64,000 bases of DNA from Octopus bimaculoides. Taxonomy: Eukaryota. Below are positions 13,150 through 52,318 of the stretch, piece after piece (position 1 is the first letter of the stretch; every line of letters starts with the position of its first letter). The translations under genes and the position numbers were made by a program. Where the stretch lies: positions 189,087,867 to 189,151,866 of the forward strand of contig NC_068982.1 of assembly GCF_001194135.2 (NCBI RefSeq), written 5' to 3'. Under the pieces are notes generated by a model that saw only the letters and a list, made by a program, of their open reading frames with translations, was not told the origin of the DNA and searched no databases.

Positions 13150-13432
13150 AAATCCTGATGGCGACGACGATGACGACGACGATGATNNNNNNNNNNNNNN
13201 NNNNNNNNNNNNNNNNNNNNNNNNNNNNNNNNNNNNNNNNNNNNNNNNNNNNNNNNNNNNNNNNNNNNNNNNNNNNNNNNNNNNNNNNNNNNNNNNNNNN
13301 NNNNNNNNNNNNNNNNNNNNNNNNNNNNNNNNNNNNNNNNNNNNNNNNNNNNNNNNNNNNNNNNNNNNNNNNNNNNNNNNNNNNNNNNNNNNNNNATAAT
13401 GATGGTGGTGGTGATGATGGTGATGATGATGG

Positions 13433-13464
<32 letters not shown>

Positions 13465-13521
13465 GTGGTGGTGATGATGTAGATGAGGGTGATGCTGCTG
13501 ATGATGATGATGGTTGTGGTA

Positions 13522-13566
<45 letters not shown>

Positions 13567-13701
13567 GTGGTAGTGATGATGTAGATGAGGGTGATACTGG
13601 TGATGATGATGATGATGGTCATGATAATGATGGTGGTGGTGATGATGTAGATGAGGGTGATGCTGCTGATGATGATGATGGTTGTGATAATGATGAGGAG
13701 G

Positions 13702-13754
<53 letters not shown>

Positions 13755-19607: not shown

Positions 19608-21015
19608 TTAAATGATAAATTTCTGCAAAGTTTTACAGATTTTTACAGTTCCAGTGATGGATTGGATCTGTAGTCTTTGAATTAGCTTTCTCCTTTCTGG
19701 TTTTGAGAACCCTAATTTATTATGATTGGTATTTAGGCAGTGTATTACATATCTCAGGGCCCTAATGATTACAGGTATAAACGTGAACTTGTAATCTGGA
19801 TAGAGTAACTGCAGATTTCTCAATAGTTCCGCATAGGTGTTCTCTTTTTCACTGATCTTCAGCTTTATGTTAACATCCTCTGGGCAGATAATTTCCACAA
19901 CCGTGCACAGTTTCTCTTCTCTATCCCAAATCATTATATCAGGTCTTTTAAGCTTACACTTTATTGAGTTCTTCACTGGTACATTCCACCAGTATTCCTT
20001 TTCATTACGAGTGGCTATGGCTTCTACCATATTGTGGGTTCTTATTTCTTTGTCCTCGACATTATCCTTCCGATGGATTTCATTATAGAGGGTCCTAGCT
20101 ACAACATCATATCTCATTGGTAAATAATATGGTTGTGACATTTTCGGACAACTGGTTATGATGTGGGTGATATCCTCAGTGTTGACTCCACAAAGTCTGC
20201 ATCGGTTGTCACATTTTACTGCTTTTCCTGCATCACTATCCCTTTTGTGCATCAGGTACTTGGATGATATTTCCTGTTCCTGGATTGCAAATGCATACCC
20301 TTCAAAGTGGGAGGTAGTAATCCGGCCTTTTGTCCCTGATAAACTGCTTTGAGGATCGATGTTACCATCACTCTGGAGCTTTCTAGTAACATATCCATGC
20401 ATGGTCTTCTGCTCGCATAGGCTCATCCTTTCATCTGATGATACGTTGCGGTAGAGTCATGCGACTTCTTTGGGAATGCATTTAAGGTTATCAGATAAGG
20501 AATGCTGCTCAAGGAGCTGCTTTTTAAGTCTCATGATGTTATCAGCCTCATGTGTGCCAACTTGGTCAAGGGATGCACTTCGACACTTGGTGGTTGAAAG
20601 ATGTTGCTGAAGGGATAGGATACGACATTCAAAGGCATTTCAGATCAATGTTCAGCAACTGTTGCTTTGTTTTCATTTTAGGTGGAAACGGTCAATGTCG
20701 TTGTTGATGTGGAAATTATGTAAGTTGATTAGCATCATCTGAGTTTTCACATCAAAGGCTCAGATCTCATCAAGCAGCCCAAATGTTGGTATGAGTACTG
20801 GCACTGCAAACACATTGTGGGCCACGGTTTCATTGAATGCAGAGAGTTCTGAGGTCCATATTTTTTTTTATTTGGTTATAATCTTCTTTAGTGATACATG
20901 TCCCATTACAGGTGCCATCGTAAGATATGTTTTCATCCGACCCAAGGTACCTGTAACATTCTTCATCGGATACAGGGAAAACAGTTAGTTCATTGATAGA
21001 GATGTTAATCTGCAT
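19608..21015 (-). mobile_element. 5'-truncated R4/Dong-like non-LTR retrotransposon with a restriction-like endonuclease
   Basis: YRYLG..IWTSELSAFNETVAHNVFAVPVL (RT thumb region); 272-aa ORF with CRLC-x8-H-x4-C zinc knuckle, RYD (RHN-equivalent) and RPDIMIWD..VVEI (PD..D/E nuclease); ends sit in TA/TATG microsatellites. Confidence 0.85.
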
Positions 21016-35983: not shown

Positions 35984-36364
35984 TCAAGATTCCGAAGGTG
36001 GTTCTTTTACTTGTTGTGTGTCCTTCTGAGTTTCCAAATCAATTCTTTCTTTGGCTCGATAAACTTTCGACTGTATGTAGAAAGAACCACCCTTTTGCTT
36101 GTCGTTGACATCAAATAAGTGTTTGAAGTTCTTATTTACTTTTTCCAAGTCCTCCAAATCCGTGACATTGAGGATAGTTTTGGCTTCGGCCAAAGTAATC
36201 CCCGTCACATTGTCGTCGGCAGCGCGACGGGTCCCTCTTCGTCCGCCGCCAGATCTCTGAGCATTTTGTTGACTAGTCCTCAATTCCTGGCGTAAAGCAG
36301 CCGTAAAGGCCCGTCCCACGATCTGGGCTCCAGCCACAATGATTTGTGCAAGATACTTGGCCAT
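35984..36364 (-). CDS. PAM16: Mitochondrial import motor subunit PAM16/Tim16/Magmas (J-like protein), 126 aa, uninterrupted CDS
   Basis: MAKYLAQIIV..VGRAF..ALRQE, ITLAEAKTILNV, HLFDVNDKQKGGSFYIQSKVYRAKERID closely match Pam16 family hallmarks; full length, no stops; tandem TGA TGA; AATAAA at 35863-35868 (-). Confidence 0.97.
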   Translation of the reverse strand: MAKYLAQIIVAGAQIVGRAFTAALRQELRTSQQNAQRSGGGRRGTRRAADDNVTGITLAEAKTILNVTDLEDLEKVNKNFKHLFDVNDKQKGGSFYIQSKVYRAKERIDLETQKDTQQVKEPPSES

Positions 36365-44994: not shown

Positions 44995-45247
44995 TACTGT
45001 TGTGTCTGGGGAGAACCATTCTCTTTTAGTGTCTTATAATTTAACACACTCACCAGTTCGATTTCCACTCATTTACTTATTTATTTTTTCTAAAATTTTT
45101 GTTGCGTCCTGCAACCTTTTCAAGACTATTGAAAAGGTTGCAAGACGCAACGAAAAAATTAAAAAACAAATAAGTGGAAATTTTCCCAGTGAGTGTGTTA
45201 AATTATATGGCACAAAAAGAAAATGACTCTCGCCGGACACAACAGAA
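44995..45247. mobile_element. Palindromic TA-flanked MITE (about 125-bp arms, 5-nt loop) downstream of TIMELESS
   Basis: CTGTTGTGTC..TTATAATTTAACACACTCAC..GTTGCGTCCTGCAACCTTTTCAA-gacta-TTGAAAAGGTTGCAAGACGCAAC..GTGAGTGTGTTAAATTATA..GACACAACAG; TA on both sides. Confidence 0.85.
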
Positions 45248-45475
45248 TATGCTTCAATACACAAACTCACATAAAGAATCTTGCAAACCAAATCCCAAAA
45301 CAATATATATATATATATGATGCTGACTCTCCATAAATATAAAAATAATAATGATAATTTCCTGTTAGACATTCTTTGAGCCTTTGAGTCACAGAAGATG
45401 CCAAAGGAAGAAAATATGATTTGGGGAATGGTTACTTAATTTCTTTTACTCCAAGAAAGATTTGGAAAGTCACCT

Positions 45476-48400
45476 TTAATCATTCTCATCATCACTGCTA
45501 AGAACACGTTTCCTGCGAATGGCAGTAACAAGTGGTATATGGTCATCAAAGACATTGGTGTCTGGTTCCATATTTGGTAAGGACAACAAAGTGGCTGGGA
45601 AAGTATCAACAGTATTGTTGTTGATAATATTTGGATTCTGTTTGACATATTTGGGGGTCTGGACACTTTTAGCTTTGTCGAACAAATCAACATCATCCTG
45701 TTTTGGGTTCAATTCTTTAGTGGAATCAATTTCATGATTTTCCTTATCTTCATCACCTGAATCATCATCAGAGCTCTCCAATATTGCAATTTTCTGCCGT
45801 TTACTTCCATTTACCGTTTTTCTTTCTGCAGCAGAGTCATCCAACTCCTCCATAGTCTTCCCACTGTGGCCACCGTCACTGCTCTCAGAGTCTATCAGTT
45901 TTTGTCGCTTTTTGGTTTTCTTCACAAAACTTGGTCCTGCAAGCTGCGGGACTGTTGCTTCCTTATTAAGGGAAACATCATCGTTTTCTTGTTGAAGGTC
46001 TACAGTGCTAACATTATGATTTCCCGCATCCTCATCGCTGCTATCACTCAATAAACGCTTCTTTTTCTTCTTCTTCTTTTCGGAGGTTCCAACAGTGTCA
46101 AAGTTCTCCAACTCAGTTTCGATAAACAACCGGCCATCATCACTGTCACTGTCGGAAGAATTGAACTTTGCTAAAGGAGTTTCTTTTCTCTTTGAACAGT
46201 TAGCGTTAAAATCTTGGTTAATTTTTTTCTTGGATGTTGGCAGAGAATTAAGAGGTACATCACTATCATCATCACTGTCATCATCAGCATTTTGTTTAGA
46301 TTTTACCTGAGAAATAAGAGGTTCATCCCCACTCTCATCATCATCATCAATTTGGATGGAACCATTCCGTGCATTACTCTCAGATCTATCTTCTACATCA
46401 TCCTCATCACTGCTGTCCTCAAACTCAATTCTCCTCCTCTTCTTTTTTTTATTCTCTTTTGAATTTCTTTGTTTAGAAAACTTTGGAGAATTACTCCCAG
46501 AAACATTTAGTTGAGAGTTGGAATCACCATTTTCTTCTTCAGAGTTTTCAGAAATCTTTTTCTTCTTTGTTCGCCGTTGCTTTTTTGAGTTTTTTTTATC
46601 TTCATCATTGTTTTTACTGGATTTTGCTTTGTTCTTTCCTTTAGTTTTTTTGTCTTTTGTTTGTTTTTTCTGCAGTGCCATTAGCGCTTTCTTCCTTTTA
46701 CCATTATTTTCAGAGGTTTTTGATTTCTCTTTCTTTGATTTATTTTGTTTTTGACCAGTCTTTGACTTCACTGACCTAGCCACCAACCATGTCTTCAGTT
46801 CTGCTGTATTTGTAGGCTGACCGTTCTCGTCCAGATTCAAGCCATCAGCAATCATGGTCAACGTGGAACCATCCAAATCACCAGTGATACGCCAGAAAGC
46901 CTCTTGACCAGTGATAGGCTTTGAGAGGCCAATCAGCAACAGGAAGTCAAGAAATATAGGGTCTTCCATTGCCTCCTCATTTTCTTCAGTAAGTGGTACC
47001 ACAGGTACACCAACATAGGTACCCGGTGTCTGTCTGTCTTCAGCAGTTCTTCGCAGTGACCTCTGGATCCAGCTGATGGGACCTTTGTAGTCATGGCTCA
47101 CCAAACATTTCAAAACATCCTCAATATCAGTGCTAGGTAGGTCATCACTGTTGCTAGGTTGGCCCTCAATATCACGAGTTCCTTCGACTTCATCACTTTC
47201 CTCTCCAGAGGAATCAGAATGGGTGGCCATCACATGACCTTCTTGAACACAATCATCATCATCATTTGAATCACTGTTACTTCCACTCTCACCACTCCCA
47301 TCCATTCGTCCCTGTTTCTTCCTCCTTGATCTTTTCTTATAGAGTTCTTTCTTATCCTGGACAATATCCAAACCAAAAAGTTTATCTTTGATTTTATTCT
47401 TGGGTTTAGTAAAAGACAAATTCTGCATGGTGTTACCAAGTGGATCATCAGACCCTCGAAACCGTTCAAAAGCATCTCTGAGTTCTGTTTCTTGTTCCTC
47501 CGTCCATGGCGCCCTGTCACTGTTGGTCGATGGGGGTTGTTTTCGTTTCAAATCTTTAGCAGATTGAATCAAGCCACTGATTCTCAGCTGGCGGAGAACC
47601 TGACCACGAGATTTGGTCTCGTCCGTTAAATGTGCCATGATATGACCAACAATATCCTTCTCAGGGTCTTCTTTCGCTTCATCAAACAACCGTTTTAGTT
47701 CCATTTCCTGGTCCTCAGTCCAAACTTGTTTCACATTTTGGTTTGGATTAAAGTAACCATCCGAAAGTTCTCCAGCTTCCCGGGCTGTTTTCCAGAATAA
47801 CATTTCCATGAAAATTTTTTTGTTCTTCTCAGCTACAACGAAGAATTTCCGGACAATGAACACACCAAATTGCACTATTTCCTGAAAATGCTTCACTTTG
47901 GACAGGGCAAATGCTTCTCTGAAGATGCAAAACAGGCGGGCTTGGAAGAACATGCCCTCCTGATGAAGATCAACAGCAATACGGTGGAACATTTTGATGA
48001 TGCAGTGGTTTGTAAAAGCTGAATTGTTTTTGAAGTTAGCAAGTAGGGTGGTGTAACTTTGGAGAATCGCAGGTTTGGCAAATTTAGCAATAAAATCTCG
48101 AGTACTGAGTTCTTCTTCACTGGTAACAACCGAAGACATTTCCTCTTCGACAATATCATCTTCCTGTTCTTCTAATTCTTCAGCCACTGTAGCAGCCATG
48201 TTTTCACTATTCTGAGATAAATTTGCCATAAATACCTCTCTTAGGGCTAAAAATTCATCTTCGGGACTCATTTCAGCACTGCCAAATTCATTGTTGTCAG
48301 GCCAAACCTCCCGGGCTGCACGGAGAAGTGCCACAGCTTCTGCAGGATTTTTTGATCGAAGGCAGGTCTGTATACGTACCATAGTATCTGCTCGCTGTTG

Positions 48401-50176
48401 ATCAATGTCGACTTCTGAAGCGGCATCGAAGGGGAGAACACCTTCACTCATTTCATTCTCTCCACTCAACACAGCAGAAACTTCACTAGAAACATCATCC
48501 CACAGATTAAGAAGTTCTTCTTCAGATAATTGCGTTCTCGAAGAATTGCCAGCATTGTTGTTTTTATTATTCCGAGAGCTTTTAGATTTCTGTGAGGCTT
48601 TCTTTTTTTTTTGTACCACGATACATCGGTTAGATTTCTGGGAAATCTCCAACATCTTCAAGAACAGATGAGTTGCATGCACCAAATCTGTCAAATAGGA
48701 GGTAGAATATTTGCTGTGATCGAACTTACTTAACAGAACCACGAATATATCGCGAAATTCCATCATGTAGAAAATATTACCTTTTAAGACCTTAGCACTT
48801 GATACAAGGTGCTTGTTCTTGGATGTTTCCATAGAATGAAGAGTCATTAAAAGTTCTTGATAAGCCTTCAGAGCCAGATGCACTCGTTTCGCCCAGACTT
48901 TAGCTTCTTTCTTATCTGTCGTAATCATTTCATAATAATTGAAGAGATTCACCTGGATGTAATGAAAGGCAGACACTGACAGAGTTTCACTAATGAGTTC
49001 AACCTGTTGGCTGTGCAAACGACAAAATTCCATGAAAAACCGCAAGGCCCACAAATAATAGGTTTCATCATGATCTTGAGCAACCTCACGCACCAAATTA
49101 TCTTTCACTGCAGACATAAGGGGATTGTAGCAGTTCTCCAAGAACTGGACGCAGAATTCTTTTAGGCACAGGCGAATACTCAGAGTTGATCTGCGAACAA
49201 CATCGACTTGTGTGATGGGGGCACGGTTTTTGGGGGTAACACGAGATTTTTTAGTAATATCAAAAGAATGGTTACCTGCTTTATACAGGGATCCGTGAAA
49301 GATGACTTCTCTATCGCTAATCGACTGGACATTCTTAAGTACGTAGGTGCCACCGAACCGGGAGTGTCTTGTACTCATGTATCGAACTCGTTTTTGTTTA
49401 GCAATTCGTTCCTGTTCACGAATAATTTCCAATTCTCTCACATCTTTTTCTTTTTCGCTGATCGCTCGTTGGACACCGGCCGAAGCAAGCAAGGCAGGTG
49501 TTTGTTGACGAAACATCAGAGTTACAATCTCCAATGTATGCATGCAGTACTGTCTTTCGTCAGCAGAATTAGACACATATAGGAGTAAATCTTCCATACC
49601 GCTGACGTGTAACGACCACAGCACTTGGTCGTGAATGCTGGCATCGTCGTCCGTCCTCTTTTCTTCGTTGGCATCTGGCTGAACATGAAGCACATTCCGT
49701 ACTAGGATCAACAGCCTTTCAATCAACACTCGGTCCTCTTCGTGTCTGTGTTCCCAGTCAAGTTTCAATAAATCGGTTAATTTCTCGGTGAGTACAGCGA
49801 AAAGCACATCGTCGACGAAGGCCTTTTTGTAGTTCCTCAGAATGCTTTCTACTTCCATGTAGTAGTTCCTCAGAACTTTATCTTCGGGAATCTGGCCCCC
49901 AAAACAAAGACGTGCCGGCTGTGTAAGATTAAGTAACAGCCGTATGACAGTCTCGAAAAGACTGCGATCGGATTTGTATTCTTTAATCAAAGGTAGTAAG
50001 TCACTTTGTACAATTTCTGCCTGTCCCAGCTGGCGACGAATGCAACACGTATCGTCATCTCGTCTCAAACAACGTATCAGATCTTTTACCGATTCCAGAC
50101 AATCCGGTTCTTTTAAGTATTTCGACCCTTCCTGGTAACCGAGGGCACTGCATATAGCTTGTAATTCAACATCCAT
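45476..50176 (-). CDS. TIMELESS: TIMELESS homolog of the mammalian/timeout (TIM2, fork protection complex) type, 1566 aa, single uninterrupted ORF
   Basis: N-terminus CSALGY..KEPDCLESVKDLIR, RHSRFGG, FLENCYN, DETYY.WAL.FFM, RVHLALKAYQELL; two SANT/Myb-like repeats (WTEDQE.., WTEEQE..); PARP-binding region VPVVPLTEENEEAME..GQEAFWRI; strong Kozak context atcATGG. Confidence 0.97.
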   Translation of the reverse strand: MDVELQAICSALGYQEGSKYLKEPDCLESVKDLIRCLRRDDDTCCIRRQLGQAEIVQSDLLPLIKEYKSDRSLFETVIRLLLNLTQPARLCFGGQIPEDKVLRNYYMEVESILRNYKKAFVDDVLFAVLTEKLTDLLKLDWEHRHEEDRVLIERLLILVRNVLHVQPDANEEKRTDDDASIHDQVLWSLHVSGMEDLLLYVSNSADERQYCMHTLEIVTLMFRQQTPALLASAGVQRAISEKEKDVRELEIIREQERIAKQKRVRYMSTRHSRFGGTYVLKNVQSISDREVIFHGSLYKAGNHSFDITKKSRVTPKNRAPITQVDVVRRSTLSIRLCLKEFCVQFLENCYNPLMSAVKDNLVREVAQDHDETYYLWALRFFMEFCRLHSQQVELISETLSVSAFHYIQVNLFNYYEMITTDKKEAKVWAKRVHLALKAYQELLMTLHSMETSKNKHLVSSAKVLKGNIFYMMEFRDIFVVLLSKFDHSKYSTSYLTDLVHATHLFLKMLEISQKSNRCIVVQKKKKASQKSKSSRNNKNNNAGNSSRTQLSEEELLNLWDDVSSEVSAVLSGENEMSEGVLPFDAASEVDIDQQRADTMVRIQTCLRSKNPAEAVALLRAAREVWPDNNEFGSAEMSPEDEFLALREVFMANLSQNSENMAATVAEELEEQEDDIVEEEMSSVVTSEEELSTRDFIAKFAKPAILQSYTTLLANFKNNSAFTNHCIIKMFHRIAVDLHQEGMFFQARLFCIFREAFALSKVKHFQEIVQFGVFIVRKFFVVAEKNKKIFMEMLFWKTAREAGELSDGYFNPNQNVKQVWTEDQEMELKRLFDEAKEDPEKDIVGHIMAHLTDETKSRGQVLRQLRISGLIQSAKDLKRKQPPSTNSDRAPWTEEQETELRDAFERFRGSDDPLGNTMQNLSFTKPKNKIKDKLFGLDIVQDKKELYKKRSRRKKQGRMDGSGESGSNSDSNDDDDCVQEGHVMATHSDSSGEESDEVEGTRDIEGQPSNSDDLPSTDIEDVLKCLVSHDYKGPISWIQRSLRRTAEDRQTPGTYVGVPVVPLTEENEEAMEDPIFLDFLLLIGLSKPITGQEAFWRITGDLDGSTLTMIADGLNLDENGQPTNTAELKTWLVARSVKSKTGQKQNKSKKEKSKTSENNGKRKKALMALQKKQTKDKKTKGKNKAKSSKNNDEDKKNSKKQRRTKKKKISENSEEENGDSNSQLNVSGSNSPKFSKQRNSKENKKKKRRRIEFEDSSDEDDVEDRSESNARNGSIQIDDDDESGDEPLISQVKSKQNADDDSDDDSDVPLNSLPTSKKKINQDFNANCSKRKETPLAKFNSSDSDSDDGRLFIETELENFDTVGTSEKKKKKKKRLLSDSSDEDAGNHNVSTVDLQQENDDVSLNKEATVPQLAGPSFVKKTKKRQKLIDSESSDGGHSGKTMEELDDSAAERKTVNGSKRQKIAILESSDDDSGDEDKENHEIDSTKELNPKQDDVDLFDKAKSVQTPKYVKQNPNIINNNTVDTFPATLLSLPNMEPDTNVFDDHIPLVTAIRRKRVLSSDDEND

Positions 50177-50270
50177 GATGGTGCTAAAACATTAAACATC
50201 AAGTAAGAGAATCAACCGTGGACACTAGTTTAGAAGGAAACAACAACAACGTGACAACACCTTCACTCAC

Positions 50271-50284
50271 AATTGGCGCCAATT
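50271..50284. promoter_or_regulatory. Perfect palindrome AATTGGCGCCAATT, E2F-like site
   Basis: About 95 nt upstream of the TIMELESS ATG; the TTGGCGC core matches the E2F consensus. Confidence 0.5.
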
Positions 50285-50595
50285 CTGAAAACGAGGCTGG
50301 CCGCTTACGATGTTGTCACAAACCAACACCAACAGTTAAAATTTATGTATATATAAAATTACATTTAATGTATATATCTATATAAGCTTATTTAACCTAG
50401 TCATAAATTTCTACATATTTTTTTTTCTTAAAAAAGGATTCTCTCAGTTATAAACACAATTGTCTTCTCTCCTATTTTTCCTTCCTCTCATTTTACTCAT
50501 CACTTTCTCCCTCTCTCTCTCTCTCTCTCTCTTTTCCCCTATTCACACGCAAACCTCTTCAAGTAACACTTTTTAAAGATATCCAACACACTGAC

Positions 50596-51562: not shown

Positions 51563-52318
51563 ATGATCTTATGGCTGCTATGGACTTTACTCGAGATTTA
51601 TATATGTTTTAATTTCATACAATATATACTTTACCAATATACTGATTTCTCATCGTATTTACCTTTAGCGAAGATACGCCTCAACGAACTGTGGCATTAT
51701 TCAGTGAAGCCGATGTTACTCAACTTTAATTATCACATCATAGATTTATGGCGAAACTTTACTTTCGAAAGACTTTATGAGAAACTCTATTCTTTTGGCT
51801 GCTTTATTTTCATGCCTCTCTATAACAGTTATCTTTTTAAAAGTTGTAAAAGACTCTTCACGAAATATGCCCCATCATATCTTCCTGCCAAATACCTCCC
51901 AATATATTTGATTATTTTTGCAATAACTTGCTATCTGATATATAAACTGTGTAGAAGGGAACCACAAAGGATGCGGTCCCATACGCAGAGACACAGAAGT
52001 GGTCTTCGTGCCCCACGACCTCATTTTCCCCCGGACATTGAACCATTTTCTGACGACGAGCCTGACAACGAAGCTGAAGATATTTCTTTCAACAACATCG
52101 ATGATAATGGTAATAGTGGTTCTGTTGATTTAAGTAGTTACAGAAATGCCAGCCATCGCAGCTGTCCTGTTTGCAAACATTACGAGTTTAATGCCGTCGT
52201 CTTACCGTGTGGACACACAGCTCTGTGTTTGAAATGTGCCTTGAAATATTATTATCACCAGAGGAAATGTCCCGTATGCCAGAAAGCGATCTCCACCGTC
52301 CATCGAATATATCTATAA
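51563..52318 (+). CDS. Membrane-anchored C3HC4 RING-finger E3 ligase (RNF26/MUL1-like RING type), 251 aa from the first ATG, uninterrupted CDS
   Basis: C-x2-C-x11-C-x-H-x3-C-x2-C-x10-C-x2-C ending HRIYL*; hydrophobic N-terminus and a TM-like YLPIYLIIFAITCYLIY segment; acidic linker; Kozak actATG. The ORF track starts at a TTG two codons earlier. Confidence 0.85.
   Translation: MILWLLWTLLEIYICFNFIQYILYQYTDFSSYLPLAKIRLNELWHYSVKPMLLNFNYHIIDLWRNFTFERLYEKLYSFGCFIFMPLYNSYLFKSCKRLFTKYAPSYLPAKYLPIYLIIFAITCYLIYKLCRREPQRMRSHTQRHRSGLRAPRPHFPPDIEPFSDDEPDNEAEDISFNNIDDNGNSGSVDLSSYRNASHRSCPVCKHYEFNAVVLPCGHTALCLKCALKYYYHQRKCPVCQKAISTVHRIYL

What the first reader, a model, noticed from the sequence alone, without database searches (positions are those of the whole stretch)
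45476..50176. A 4.7-kb intronless TIMELESS in an intron-rich genome
Seen: one continuous 1566-codon ORF with all domains intact and no interruption despite dense surrounding repeats. Established: vertebrate TIMELESS and insect timeout have many exons. Inference: the gene is a functional retrocopy or lost all its introns through recombination with cDNA. I see no remnant poly(A) tail or TSD, so any event is old.
Basis: partly seen in the sequence, partly recalled or inferred. Interest (0 to 1): 0.75.

Follow-up and report, generated by a model that had tools for sequence, protein, structure and literature searches.

The report
Intronless TIMELESS gene in octopus
Octopus and its cephalopod relatives carry their essential DNA-replication gene TIMELESS as one uninterrupted exon, whereas oysters, abalone and chitons split it into about 30; it most likely descends from an ancient mRNA-derived copy, a rare but already known kind of event.

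Summary
Window 45476-50176 (minus strand) is one 1566-codon ORF in Octopus bimaculoides chromosome CM046602.1. It encodes the mammalian-type TIMELESS (timeout/Tof1) replisome protein with all domains intact.

Oyster, abalone and chiton orthologues have about 30 or more coding exons with shared boundaries. O. sinensis, another octopod, Argonauta and a second, unnamed cephalopod lineage all have a single exon. In that second lineage the transcripts are colinear with the genome through both UTRs.

The gene is under purifying selection (dN/dS 0.1-0.2). It has a conserved core promoter with an E2F-like palindrome, TTGGCGCCAA, 106-118 nt upstream of the ATG in all five genomic loci.

Other molluscs carry an antisense LRR gene, like Drosophila 2mit, nested in one TIMELESS intron. 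In octopus the probable orthologue lies on a different chromosome, and no flanking genes are shared with oyster.

The best reading is an ancient retrogene that replaced its parent in the stem of coleoid cephalopods (about 0.55). In-situ conversion by cDNA (about 0.3) is not excluded. This is a new member of a known kind and of moderate interest. Nautilus and the octopus LRR locus are the decisive checks.

The parts
45476..50176 (-). Single coding exon of mammalian-type TIMELESS (mTIM/timeout/Tof1 orthologue), 1566 aa plus stop
   Evidence: ORF; Pfam TIMELESS and PAB domains; human TIMELESS 7pfo_K E=2.5e-298; annotated as one CDS in GCA_001194135.2; dN/dS 0.18 against O. sinensis
50273..50300 (-). 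Conserved core-promoter block CCAGCCTCG-N9-TTGGCGCCAA. The perfect palindrome TTGGCGCCAA (50273-50282) resembles overlapping E2F sites.
   Evidence: It occurs once in the window against 0.02 expected. It occurs once per locus, at -106 to -118 from the ATG, in O. bimaculoides, O. sinensis, the 83% octopod, Argonauta and decaB genomic DNA. The E2F function is inferred, not tested.
50177..50275 (-). Inferred 5'UTR of about 100 nt without an intron. The transcription start is inferred to lie at the 3' edge of the palindrome.
   Evidence: Three independent transcript contigs of the related cephalopod (L008-L010) start at CAACTGT, directly at the palindrome, and are colinear with genomic L003. The position in Octopus is by homology only. 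A short Octopus-specific 5'UTR intron (GTGAGT ... TTTTAG) cannot be excluded without RNA data.
46076..46258 (-). In-frame 183-nt segment (aa 1307-1367) that an older gene model (UniRef A0A0L8FYM3, 1505 aa) spliced out as a GT...AG intron. It is real coding sequence.
   Evidence: P0001 equals the window protein minus this one segment. The segment is conserved in frame in O. sinensis, the 83% octopod and Argonauta.
45070..45475 (-). Candidate 3'UTR. The first AATAAA lies about 390 nt after the stop. It includes a 51-nt hairpin-forming inverted repeat at 45101-45151.
   Evidence: The first ~150-400 nt of the 3' flank align between O. bimaculoides, O. sinensis and the 83% octopod; coordinates. The poly(A) site is tentative because the hexamer is not conserved in O. 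sinensis. No A-tract remnant follows it.

Best explanation
The ORF is the only mammalian-type TIMELESS (timeout/Tof1) gene of Octopus bimaculoides. By homology it encodes the fork-protection-complex subunit of the replisome. It most likely began as a processed, mRNA-derived copy. In the stem lineage of coleoid cephalopods, a spliced TIMELESS mRNA was reverse-transcribed and inserted at a new site. There it gained, or carried with it, a TATA-less promoter bearing an E2F-like palindrome at the transcription start. It then took over the function, and the ancestral gene of about 30 introns decayed (retrogene replacement, also called an orphan retrogene). That ancestral gene hosted an antisense 2mit-like LRR gene in one intron. 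The LRR gene survived at the old locus, so in Octopus it now sits on another chromosome. Shown here: the single exon, the multi-exon outgroups, the shared cephalopod state, purifying selection, expression in a relative, promoter conservation, and the nested gene in the outgroups. Inferred: retroposition rather than in-situ conversion, E2F control, and loss of the parent.
For: The CDS is a single exon in O. bimaculoides, O. sinensis, Argonauta, an unnamed ENA contig (L003) and an 83% octopod contig. Oyster, abalone and chiton have 25-30 detected exons with more than 30 shared boundaries. The cephalopod sequences form one clade, and the second lineage is sister to the octopods, each with 200/200 bootstraps. 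A transcript of the second lineage is colinear with the genome over nt 1-4614, so the UTRs also lack introns. dN/dS is 0.10-0.21. The promoter block is conserved in five species. An antisense LRR gene sits in the same intron (after about aa 650) in oyster, abalone, chiton and L012. It lies on the same chromosome as TIMELESS in three further Haliotis species, Mytilus and Pomacea. This matches Drosophila/Apis tim2-2mit in position, orientation and architecture (PMC3786989). The probable Octopus orthologue (XP_014783402.1/XP_052829873.1) is on a 57.4-Mb chromosome, whereas TIMELESS is on the 192.5-Mb chromosome. Oyster TIMELESS is flanked by ABI and MRPL53, while Octopus TIMELESS is flanked by a RING gene and Pam16, with no translated similarity between the flanks. 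No second mTIM appears in the annotated Octopus or Argonauta proteomes among the top hits. No exon relics occur in the window or the cephalopod flanks.
Against: No poly(A) remnant or target-site duplication is present. That is expected at this age, but it means the classical hallmarks are missing. In Pecten and Patella the LRR gene and TIMELESS are also on different chromosomes, so the pair can separate by other routes. Orthology of the Octopus LRR gene rests on best hits and family membership. Internal bootstrap values are low, and the annotated model lacks the conserved cytosolic tail. Coleoid genomes are heavily rearranged (my own knowledge), so lost microsynteny is weak evidence. The conserved promoter block lies just upstream of the inferred transcription start. 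An mRNA copy would not carry it unless the source transcript began further upstream. The old locus in Octopus could not be inspected.
Confidence: 0.55

Rival explanations
1. In-situ intron loss. A full-length TIMELESS cDNA recombined with the ancestral locus by gene conversion, erasing all introns at once and deleting the nested LRR gene. The promoter stayed in place. The Octopus LRR gene on another chromosome is then an earlier relocated copy or a paralogue.
For: This model also removes every intron precisely. It explains without extra steps why a conserved promoter block lies upstream of the transcription start, and why there is no poly(A) tract or TSD. Pecten and Patella show the LRR gene can leave the TIMELESS chromosome without intron loss. 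RT-mediated intron loss is an established mechanism (PMC3652778).
Against: No neighbour is shared with the oyster locus. Conversion across a gene of more than 20-60 kb with about 30 introns in one tract is unusual, since RT-mediated loss typically removes a few adjacent, 3'-biased introns (established knowledge). It would also have deleted a conserved neuronal gene unless that gene had already moved.
Confidence: 0.3
2. Stepwise loss. The roughly 30 introns were lost in many independent events along the long coleoid stem branch.
For: The stem branch is long, and Nautilus was not sampled, so intermediates cannot be excluded.
Against: Zero introns remain in the CDS and UTRs of both coleoid lineages, while three other mollusc classes keep more than 30 shared positions. 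The genome is otherwise intron-rich. The nested gene is also gone from the locus.
Confidence: 0.08
3. Artefact. The intronless copy reflects cDNA contamination or misassembly, or it is a non-functional processed pseudogene beside an unassembled real gene.
For: None beyond the general possibility.
Against: The same structure, embedded in genomic flanks with a conserved promoter, is seen in five independent assemblies or species. The ORFs are intact and dN/dS is 0.1-0.2. Transcripts match this copy.
Confidence: 0.02

Closest known systems
Retrogene replacement / orphan retrogenes (amphioxus SYCP1, PMC5803294; human orphan retrogenes, PMC3548309)
   Same: There is a single coding exon where orthologues in related groups are many-exon genes. 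No parental copy is detectable. The copy is conserved across a clade, under selection and expressed. It sits head-to-head with another gene (here a RING-finger gene 1.4 kb away in Octopus), as AmphiSYCP1 does with CHIC.
   Different: The new-versus-old locus comparison is incomplete here. The gene is an essential replisome component rather than a meiotic gene. The event is much older (shared by octopods and a second cephalopod lineage). The parent hosted a nested gene that appears to have survived elsewhere. The head-to-head RING arrangement was not found within 10 kb in Argonauta or L003.
Human TIMELESS / Drosophila timeout (tim2), the Tof1/Swi1 family
   Same: The domain order is the same and similarity to human TIMELESS is very strong over aa 1-1196. 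The protein is of the mammalian type, not the Drosophila dTIM type (E=2.5e-298 against 1.1e-33). An E2F-like promoter element fits the reported E2F1/E2F4 activation of human TIM (PMC9998586).
   Different: The gene structure differs: there are no introns, whereas mollusc, insect and vertebrate genes have many (vertebrates from my own knowledge). There is a long, fast-evolving acidic/basic Ser-rich tail (aa ~1197-1566, dN/dS ~0.3). No biochemical function was tested.
tim2-2mit host-nested gene pair of Drosophila and Apis (PMC3786989)
   Same: Oyster, abalone, chiton and L012 carry an antisense, largely single-exon LRR transmembrane gene inside a mid-gene TIMELESS intron. Its architecture matches 2MIT: signal peptide, LRR domain, Thr-rich stalk, TM segment, Ser-rich tail.
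   Different: In cephalopods the pair is dissolved. The intron no longer exists and the probable LRR orthologue is on another chromosome. Sequence orthology between the mollusc genes and fly 2MIT was not tested here.
mRNA-mediated (reverse-transcriptase) intron loss (PMC3652778)
   Same: All introns were removed precisely, with the reading frame preserved.
   Different: Typical cases lose one or a few adjacent introns, biased towards the 3' end. Here every intron is gone, including those in the UTRs.

Membership tests
TIMELESS / Tof1 / Swi1, mammalian-type (mTIM, timeout) | N-terminal TIMELESS domain | tested here: met
   PF04821, aa 19-279, E=5.5e-66
TIMELESS / Tof1 / Swi1, mammalian-type (mTIM, timeout) | Central Tof1-like helical region and HTH DNA-binding domain | tested here: met
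   PF27570 and PF26019 are on record for this exact protein. PDB 6taz_B aligns to aa 817-952 and 6t9q_A to aa 890-949.
TIMELESS / Tof1 / Swi1, mammalian-type (mTIM, timeout) | C-terminal PARP1-binding (PAB) domain | tested here: met
   PF05029, aa 1022-1106, E=1.3e-26; 4xhw/4xht hits
TIMELESS / Tof1 / Swi1, mammalian-type (mTIM, timeout) | Closer to mTIM than to Drosophila-type dTIM | tested here: met
   Human TIMELESS E=2.5e-298 against Drosophila Timeless 8dd7_B E=1.1e-33. The protein groups with 'protein timeless homolog' of molluscs and other animals.
TIMELESS / Tof1 / Swi1, mammalian-type (mTIM, timeout) | Binds TIPIN and travels with the CMG replisome | not testable with these tools
   Inferred from homology only
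Retrogene that replaced its parent (orphan retrogene) | Lacks all introns that orthologues or the parent possess | tested here: met
   One HSP at 100% identity over the full length in four cephalopod loci, against 25-30 exons in oyster, abalone and chiton. UTRs are colinear too.
Retrogene that replaced its parent (orphan retrogene) | Lies at a locus different from the ancestral one | tested here: inconclusive
   No neighbours are shared with oyster, and the probable orthologue of the formerly nested LRR gene is on another chromosome. However, Pecten and Patella also separate the pair, and the old locus could not be read.
Retrogene that replaced its parent (orphan retrogene) | Poly(A) tract remnant and target-site duplications | tested here: not met
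   None are seen in five species. This is expected to be erased after an event predating the octopod-second-lineage split, so it is uninformative rather than contradictory.
Retrogene that replaced its parent (orphan retrogene) | Parental multi-exon copy absent from the genome | tested here: inconclusive
   There is only one mTIM per species among the annotated Octopus/Argonauta proteins in the top 120 hits. There are no relics in the 64-kb window or the flanks. A whole-genome search was not possible.
Retrogene that replaced its parent (orphan retrogene) | Functional: selected and expressed | tested here: met
   dN/dS is 0.10-0.21. Polyadenylated transcripts were found in three RNA runs of the second cephalopod lineage. 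Expression in O. bimaculoides itself was not tested.
E2F-regulated S-phase promoter | E2F consensus (TTTSGCGC-like) close to the transcription start, conserved across species | tested here: met
   TTGGCGCCAA occurs once per locus at -106 to -118 in five species. The O. sinensis copy matches TTT[CG][CG]CGC exactly.
E2F-regulated S-phase promoter | E2F binding and cell-cycle-dependent transcription | not testable with these tools
   Inference only. Human TIM is reported to be activated by E2F1/E2F4 (PMC9998586).

The most novel reading that the evidence does not exclude
In the coleoid stem lineage, an essential replisome gene was replaced by its own retrocopy. This dissolved a host-nested gene pair (timeout with an antisense 2mit-like LRR gene) that otherwise persists from insects to chitons, bivalves and gastropods, making it one of the oldest known nested-gene arrangements. 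The neighbouring single-exon Pam16 and RING genes hint that this could be part of a wider wave of retrogene replacement accompanying the coleoid genome reorganisation.
Probability: 0.3. Interest if true: 0.6.

Novelty: new member of a known kind. Interest (0 to 1): 0.42.

Why it matters
TIMELESS is an essential, dosage-sensitive replisome component, so swapping the whole gene for a processed copy is a rare and risky event. A clean, clade-wide case dates a reverse-transcriptase-mediated remodelling event to the base of the coleoid cephalopods. It also gives a compact, 4.7-kb intron-free gene with a roughly 130-bp conserved promoter for functional work in cephalopods. The comparison shows in addition that the timeout-2mit nested arrangement, described only in flies and the honey bee, is probably ancestral to protostomes. 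That gives a natural experiment on what happens to a nested gene when its host intron disappears.

Tried and rejected
- **LRR homologue search.** The profile search for the nested LRR gene with the search for homologous proteins was swamped by generic LRR proteins. So was much of the exhaustive HMMER search. Orthologues had to be picked out by length, single-stretch coverage and the C-terminal tail motif.
- **Naming the second lineage.** The second cephalopod lineage (P0005/P0006) could not be named. The SRR and ERZ accessions appear in no paper, and the clusters carry no names. I call it 'probably decapodiform' from the tree only.
- **Pecten look-up.** The look-up for Pecten TIMELESS failed, so its exon structure was not verified.
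- **Synteny.** Translated comparison of oyster, abalone and chiton flanks with all cephalopod loci gave nothing. Pam16 and RING are not in the oyster flanks.
- **Retroposition hallmarks.** A search for poly(A) remnants found none. I did not search formally for short TSDs, because chance matches would dominate at this age.
- **Promoter in outgroups.** The cephalopod promoter block is absent from the 3 kb upstream of the oyster, abalone and chiton CDS starts. This is uninformative because their 5'UTR exons may lie further away.
- **Readings rejected.** I rejected pseudogene (dN/dS, intact ORFs), assembly or cDNA artefact (five independent assemblies), and identity with the circadian dTIM (PDB and Pfam scores; cephalopod dTIM is 874-920 aa).
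- **Non-coding RNA.** Rfam and tRNA scans of the window found nothing.
Full report
**Observation.** The window holds one uninterrupted ORF at 45476-50176 on the minus strand, 1566 codons from an ATG. Pfam finds the TIMELESS N-terminal domain (aa 19-279, E=5.5e-66) and the PAB domain (aa 1022-1106, E=1.3e-26). The protein aligns to human TIMELESS in the replisome structure 7pfo_K over aa 1-1196 (E=2.5e-298). It also aligns to the isolated DNA-binding and PARP1-binding domain structures. Drosophila circadian Timeless scores only E=1.1e-33. It is therefore the mammalian-type TIMELESS (timeout/Tof1) orthologue with its domains intact. An exact-sequence look-up places the window on Octopus bimaculoides chromosome CM046602.1 (GCA_001194135.2, about 189.1 Mb), where the deposited annotation also calls one 4701-nt CDS. 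An older UniRef model of 1505 aa differs only by one in-frame 61-aa segment (window 46076-46258) that starts GT and ends AG. That segment is conserved as coding sequence in all octopods, so the old 'intron' was spurious.

**Is single-exon unusual for molluscs?** Yes. The orthologues span 21.6 kb in Crassostrea virginica, 60 kb in Haliotis cracherodii and 34.8 kb in the chiton Liolophura sinensis. tblastn of each protein against its own locus resolves 25-30 separate coding exons. Together they share more than 30 boundaries (aa 29/30, 81, 120, 141/142, 175, 189/190, 227, 249, 272, 360/361, 397/398, 433, 468, 494, 537/538, 590/591, 617/618, 649/650 and onward). By contrast, four loci each give one HSP at 100% identity over the full protein: O. 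sinensis (1563 aa), Argonauta hians (1590 aa) and an unnamed ENA contig (L003, 1460 aa). A Logan contig from another octopod (83% identity) carries the upstream RING gene, the intergenic spacer and an uninterrupted 1551-aa TIMELESS.

**How old is it?** A neighbour-joining tree on 1196 well-aligned columns recovers three clades, each with 200/200 bootstraps: cephalopods, octopods, and a pair P0005 + P0006 as sister to the octopods. P0005 and P0006 are 78% identical to each other and 61-64% identical to octopods. I could not name them. Two such divergent species outside Octopoda are most simply decapodiforms, but that is inference. The single-exon state therefore predates the octopod-second-lineage split. 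Nautilus was not available.

**Is it functional?** All six cephalopod ORFs are intact. Nei-Gojobori dN/dS values are as follows:
- O. bimaculoides against O. sinensis: 0.18 (dS 0.24).
- O. bimaculoides against the 83% octopod: 0.21.
- O. bimaculoides against Argonauta: about 0.10.
- Between the two members of the second lineage: 0.15.
- Structured first 1200 residues: 0.06-0.18.
- Acidic/basic C-terminal tail: about 0.3.

P0005 sits on contigs of 4.8-5.06 kb from several sequencing runs, with nearly identical ends. These contigs end about 27 nt after an AATAAA that is conserved in the genomic sequence of the sister species. One of them aligns to that genomic locus as a single HSP over nt 1-4614. 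They are therefore polyadenylated transcripts, and the gene has no intron in the 5'UTR, the CDS or most of the 3'UTR. Expression in O. bimaculoides itself was not tested.

**Promoter.** The block CCAGCCTCG-N9-TTGGCGCCAA is conserved between octopods, Argonauta (one substitution in the left half) and the second lineage. The perfect palindrome TTGGCGCCAA occurs exactly once per locus, 106-118 nt upstream of the ATG, in all five genomic loci. The chance expectation is 0.02 per 64 kb (window 50273-50300). The transcripts begin at its 3' edge. The motif matches the E2F core in both orientations (my reading of the consensus), and human TIM is reported to be activated by E2F1/E2F4 (PMC9998586). I infer S-phase-type regulation, which is untested. 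The block was not found within 3 kb upstream of the outgroup CDS starts, which is uninformative.

**The nested gene.** In oyster, abalone and chiton an antisense gene lies in the TIMELESS intron that follows about aa 650. The three products are orthologous LRR transmembrane proteins, 30-37% identical over about 550 aa, with a shared C-terminal ...KVYTW tail. A fourth case turned up on an unnamed mollusc-like ENA contig (L012), where the LRR gene lies between TIMELESS exons for aa ~618-650 and ~683-761. Using contig length as a chromosome tag, the LRR gene and TIMELESS share a chromosome in H. rufescens, H. rubra, H. asinina, Mytilus trossulus and Pomacea canaliculata. They do not in Pecten maximus or Patella caerulea. 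In position, orientation and architecture this matches Drosophila 2mit, which lies antisense in intron 11 of tim2/timeout, and in intron 14 in Apis (PMC3786989). Sequence orthology to fly 2MIT was not tested.

**Where is the nested gene in cephalopods?** No homologue of it lies in the 64-kb window or in any cephalopod locus. The best cephalopod match to the family profile is O. bimaculoides 'LRR-containing protein 15(-like)' (XP_014783402.1/XP_052829873.1), on a 57,421,550-bp chromosome. TIMELESS is on the 192,492,730-bp chromosome. Its best BLASTP hits are the nested mollusc genes (33-36% over about 530 aa), and it falls inside the family relative to generic LRR outgroups. Internal bootstraps are low, and the annotated model lacks the conserved tail. 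I treat it as a probable orthologue.

**Synteny.** Octopus TIMELESS is flanked by two genes. A divergent RING-finger gene lies 1.4 kb upstream; it is also there in O. sinensis and the 83% octopod. Pam16 lies 9.1 kb downstream, and is also downstream in Argonauta. Oyster TIMELESS is flanked by ABI and MRPL53. Translated comparison of the outgroup flanks with all cephalopod loci gives no hit. No poly(A) remnant is visible, and no TIMELESS relics occur in the sequence available.

**Mechanism.** Three observations point to an mRNA intermediate with high confidence (about 0.85-0.9):
- More than 30 introns were lost precisely and completely.
- The UTRs are intronless.
- The host intron, with its nested gene, has disappeared.

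Between the two RNA-mediated routes I favour retroposition to a new site followed by loss of the parent (about 0.55). The reasons are that the probable LRR orthologue survives on another chromosome, no ancestral neighbour is retained, and one-tract conversion across a 20-60-kb gene would be unusual. In-situ conversion by a full-length cDNA (about 0.3) remains viable for three reasons. Pecten and Patella show the pair can separate by other routes. Coleoid genomes are heavily rearranged (my own knowledge). And a conserved promoter element lies just upstream of the transcription start, which a retrocopy would normally not carry. Stepwise loss (about 0.08) and artefact (about 0.02) are unlikely.

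**Comparison and novelty.** The case works like retrogene replacement, as described for amphioxus SYCP1 (PMC5803294) and for human orphan retrogenes (PMC3548309). For membership of that class, some defining features are met: intron absence against multi-exon orthologues, function and clade-wide conservation. Relocation and absence of the parent are inconclusive. The poly(A)/TSD hallmarks are not met, as expected at this age. Literature searches found no description of an intronless cephalopod TIMELESS, although public annotations already model it as one exon. I rate it a new member of a known kind, of moderate interest. The more interesting by-product is that the timeout-2mit nested pair seems ancestral to molluscs and perhaps to protostomes, and was dissolved in cephalopods.

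Noticed in passing
window 35984-36364 (-); L002 19092-19472: Pam16 (mitochondrial import motor subunit, 126 aa, full-length Pfam match) is also a single coding exon. It lies 9.1 kb downstream of TIMELESS in the same orientation. The same order is seen in Argonauta, 4.3 kb downstream. Whether Pam16 is multi-exon in other molluscs, which would make it a second intron-loss case, could not be checked.
   Followed up: partly
window 51563-52318 (+): A divergent RING-finger gene (zf-C3HC4_3 at the C-terminus, hydrophobic N-terminal half) reads as one 251-aa ORF from the ATG at 51563. The deposited annotation calls only the last 115 aa. The full length is 85% conserved in O. sinensis, and a 251-aa ORF is present in the 83% octopod contig. 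It lies head-to-head with TIMELESS, 1.4 kb apart, which suggests a possible shared bidirectional control region. It was not found within 10 kb in Argonauta or L003.
   Followed up: partly
L004 14458-16482 (-), L005 34263-36845 (-), L006 18509-21473 (-), L012 10001-12664 (+): An orthologous LRR transmembrane gene lies antisense inside the same TIMELESS intron in oyster, abalone, chiton and an unnamed mollusc. It mirrors Drosophila/Apis 2mit inside tim2, which suggests a very old host-nested pair. It is broken in Pecten, Patella and Octopus according to chromosome tags.
   Followed up: partly
window 46076-46258 (-): An older O. bimaculoides protein model (UniRef A0A0L8FYM3, 1505 aa) removes this in-frame 183-nt GT...AG segment as an intron. 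The segment is conserved coding sequence in other octopods, so the model is wrong, or at most reflects an exitron.
   Followed up: yes
L012 about 900-2850 (-): In the unnamed mollusc contig, the intron next to the TIMELESS exon for aa ~683-761 holds about 15-20 tandem copies (period ~89 nt) that translate to the last ~30 residues of that exon (aa ~731-761). This is an exon-derived tandem array.
   Followed up: no
L012 contig (ENA ERZ25071447 ctg86603): A second LRR paralogue of the nested-gene family (P0294, 1083 aa) is on the same 454,834-bp contig as the nested copy (P0165).
   Followed up: no
window 9327-9756 and 13399-13754: Long (ATG)n microsatellite arrays (143 and 119 copies) create spurious ORFs of 150-230 aa in several frames on both strands.
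   Followed up: yes
window 19608-20426 (-): A 272-aa ORF has a weak match to the zinc-binding region of reverse transcriptases (zf-RVT, E=0.0011, below the Pfam cut-off). It is probably a LINE relic.
   Followed up: no
window 45101-45151 (-): A 51-nt near-perfect hairpin (GTTGCGTCTTGCAACCTTTTC...GAAAAGGTTGCAGGACGCAAC) lies in the candidate 3'UTR and is also present in O. sinensis. It may be a small inverted-repeat element or a structured UTR motif.
   Followed up: no
window 50186-50268 (-): In Octopus the sequence just after the inferred transcription start reads GTGAGT, and the sequence just before the ATG reads TTTTAG. A short 5'UTR intron specific to Octopus is therefore conceivable. The related lineage's transcripts show no intron there.
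   Followed up: no
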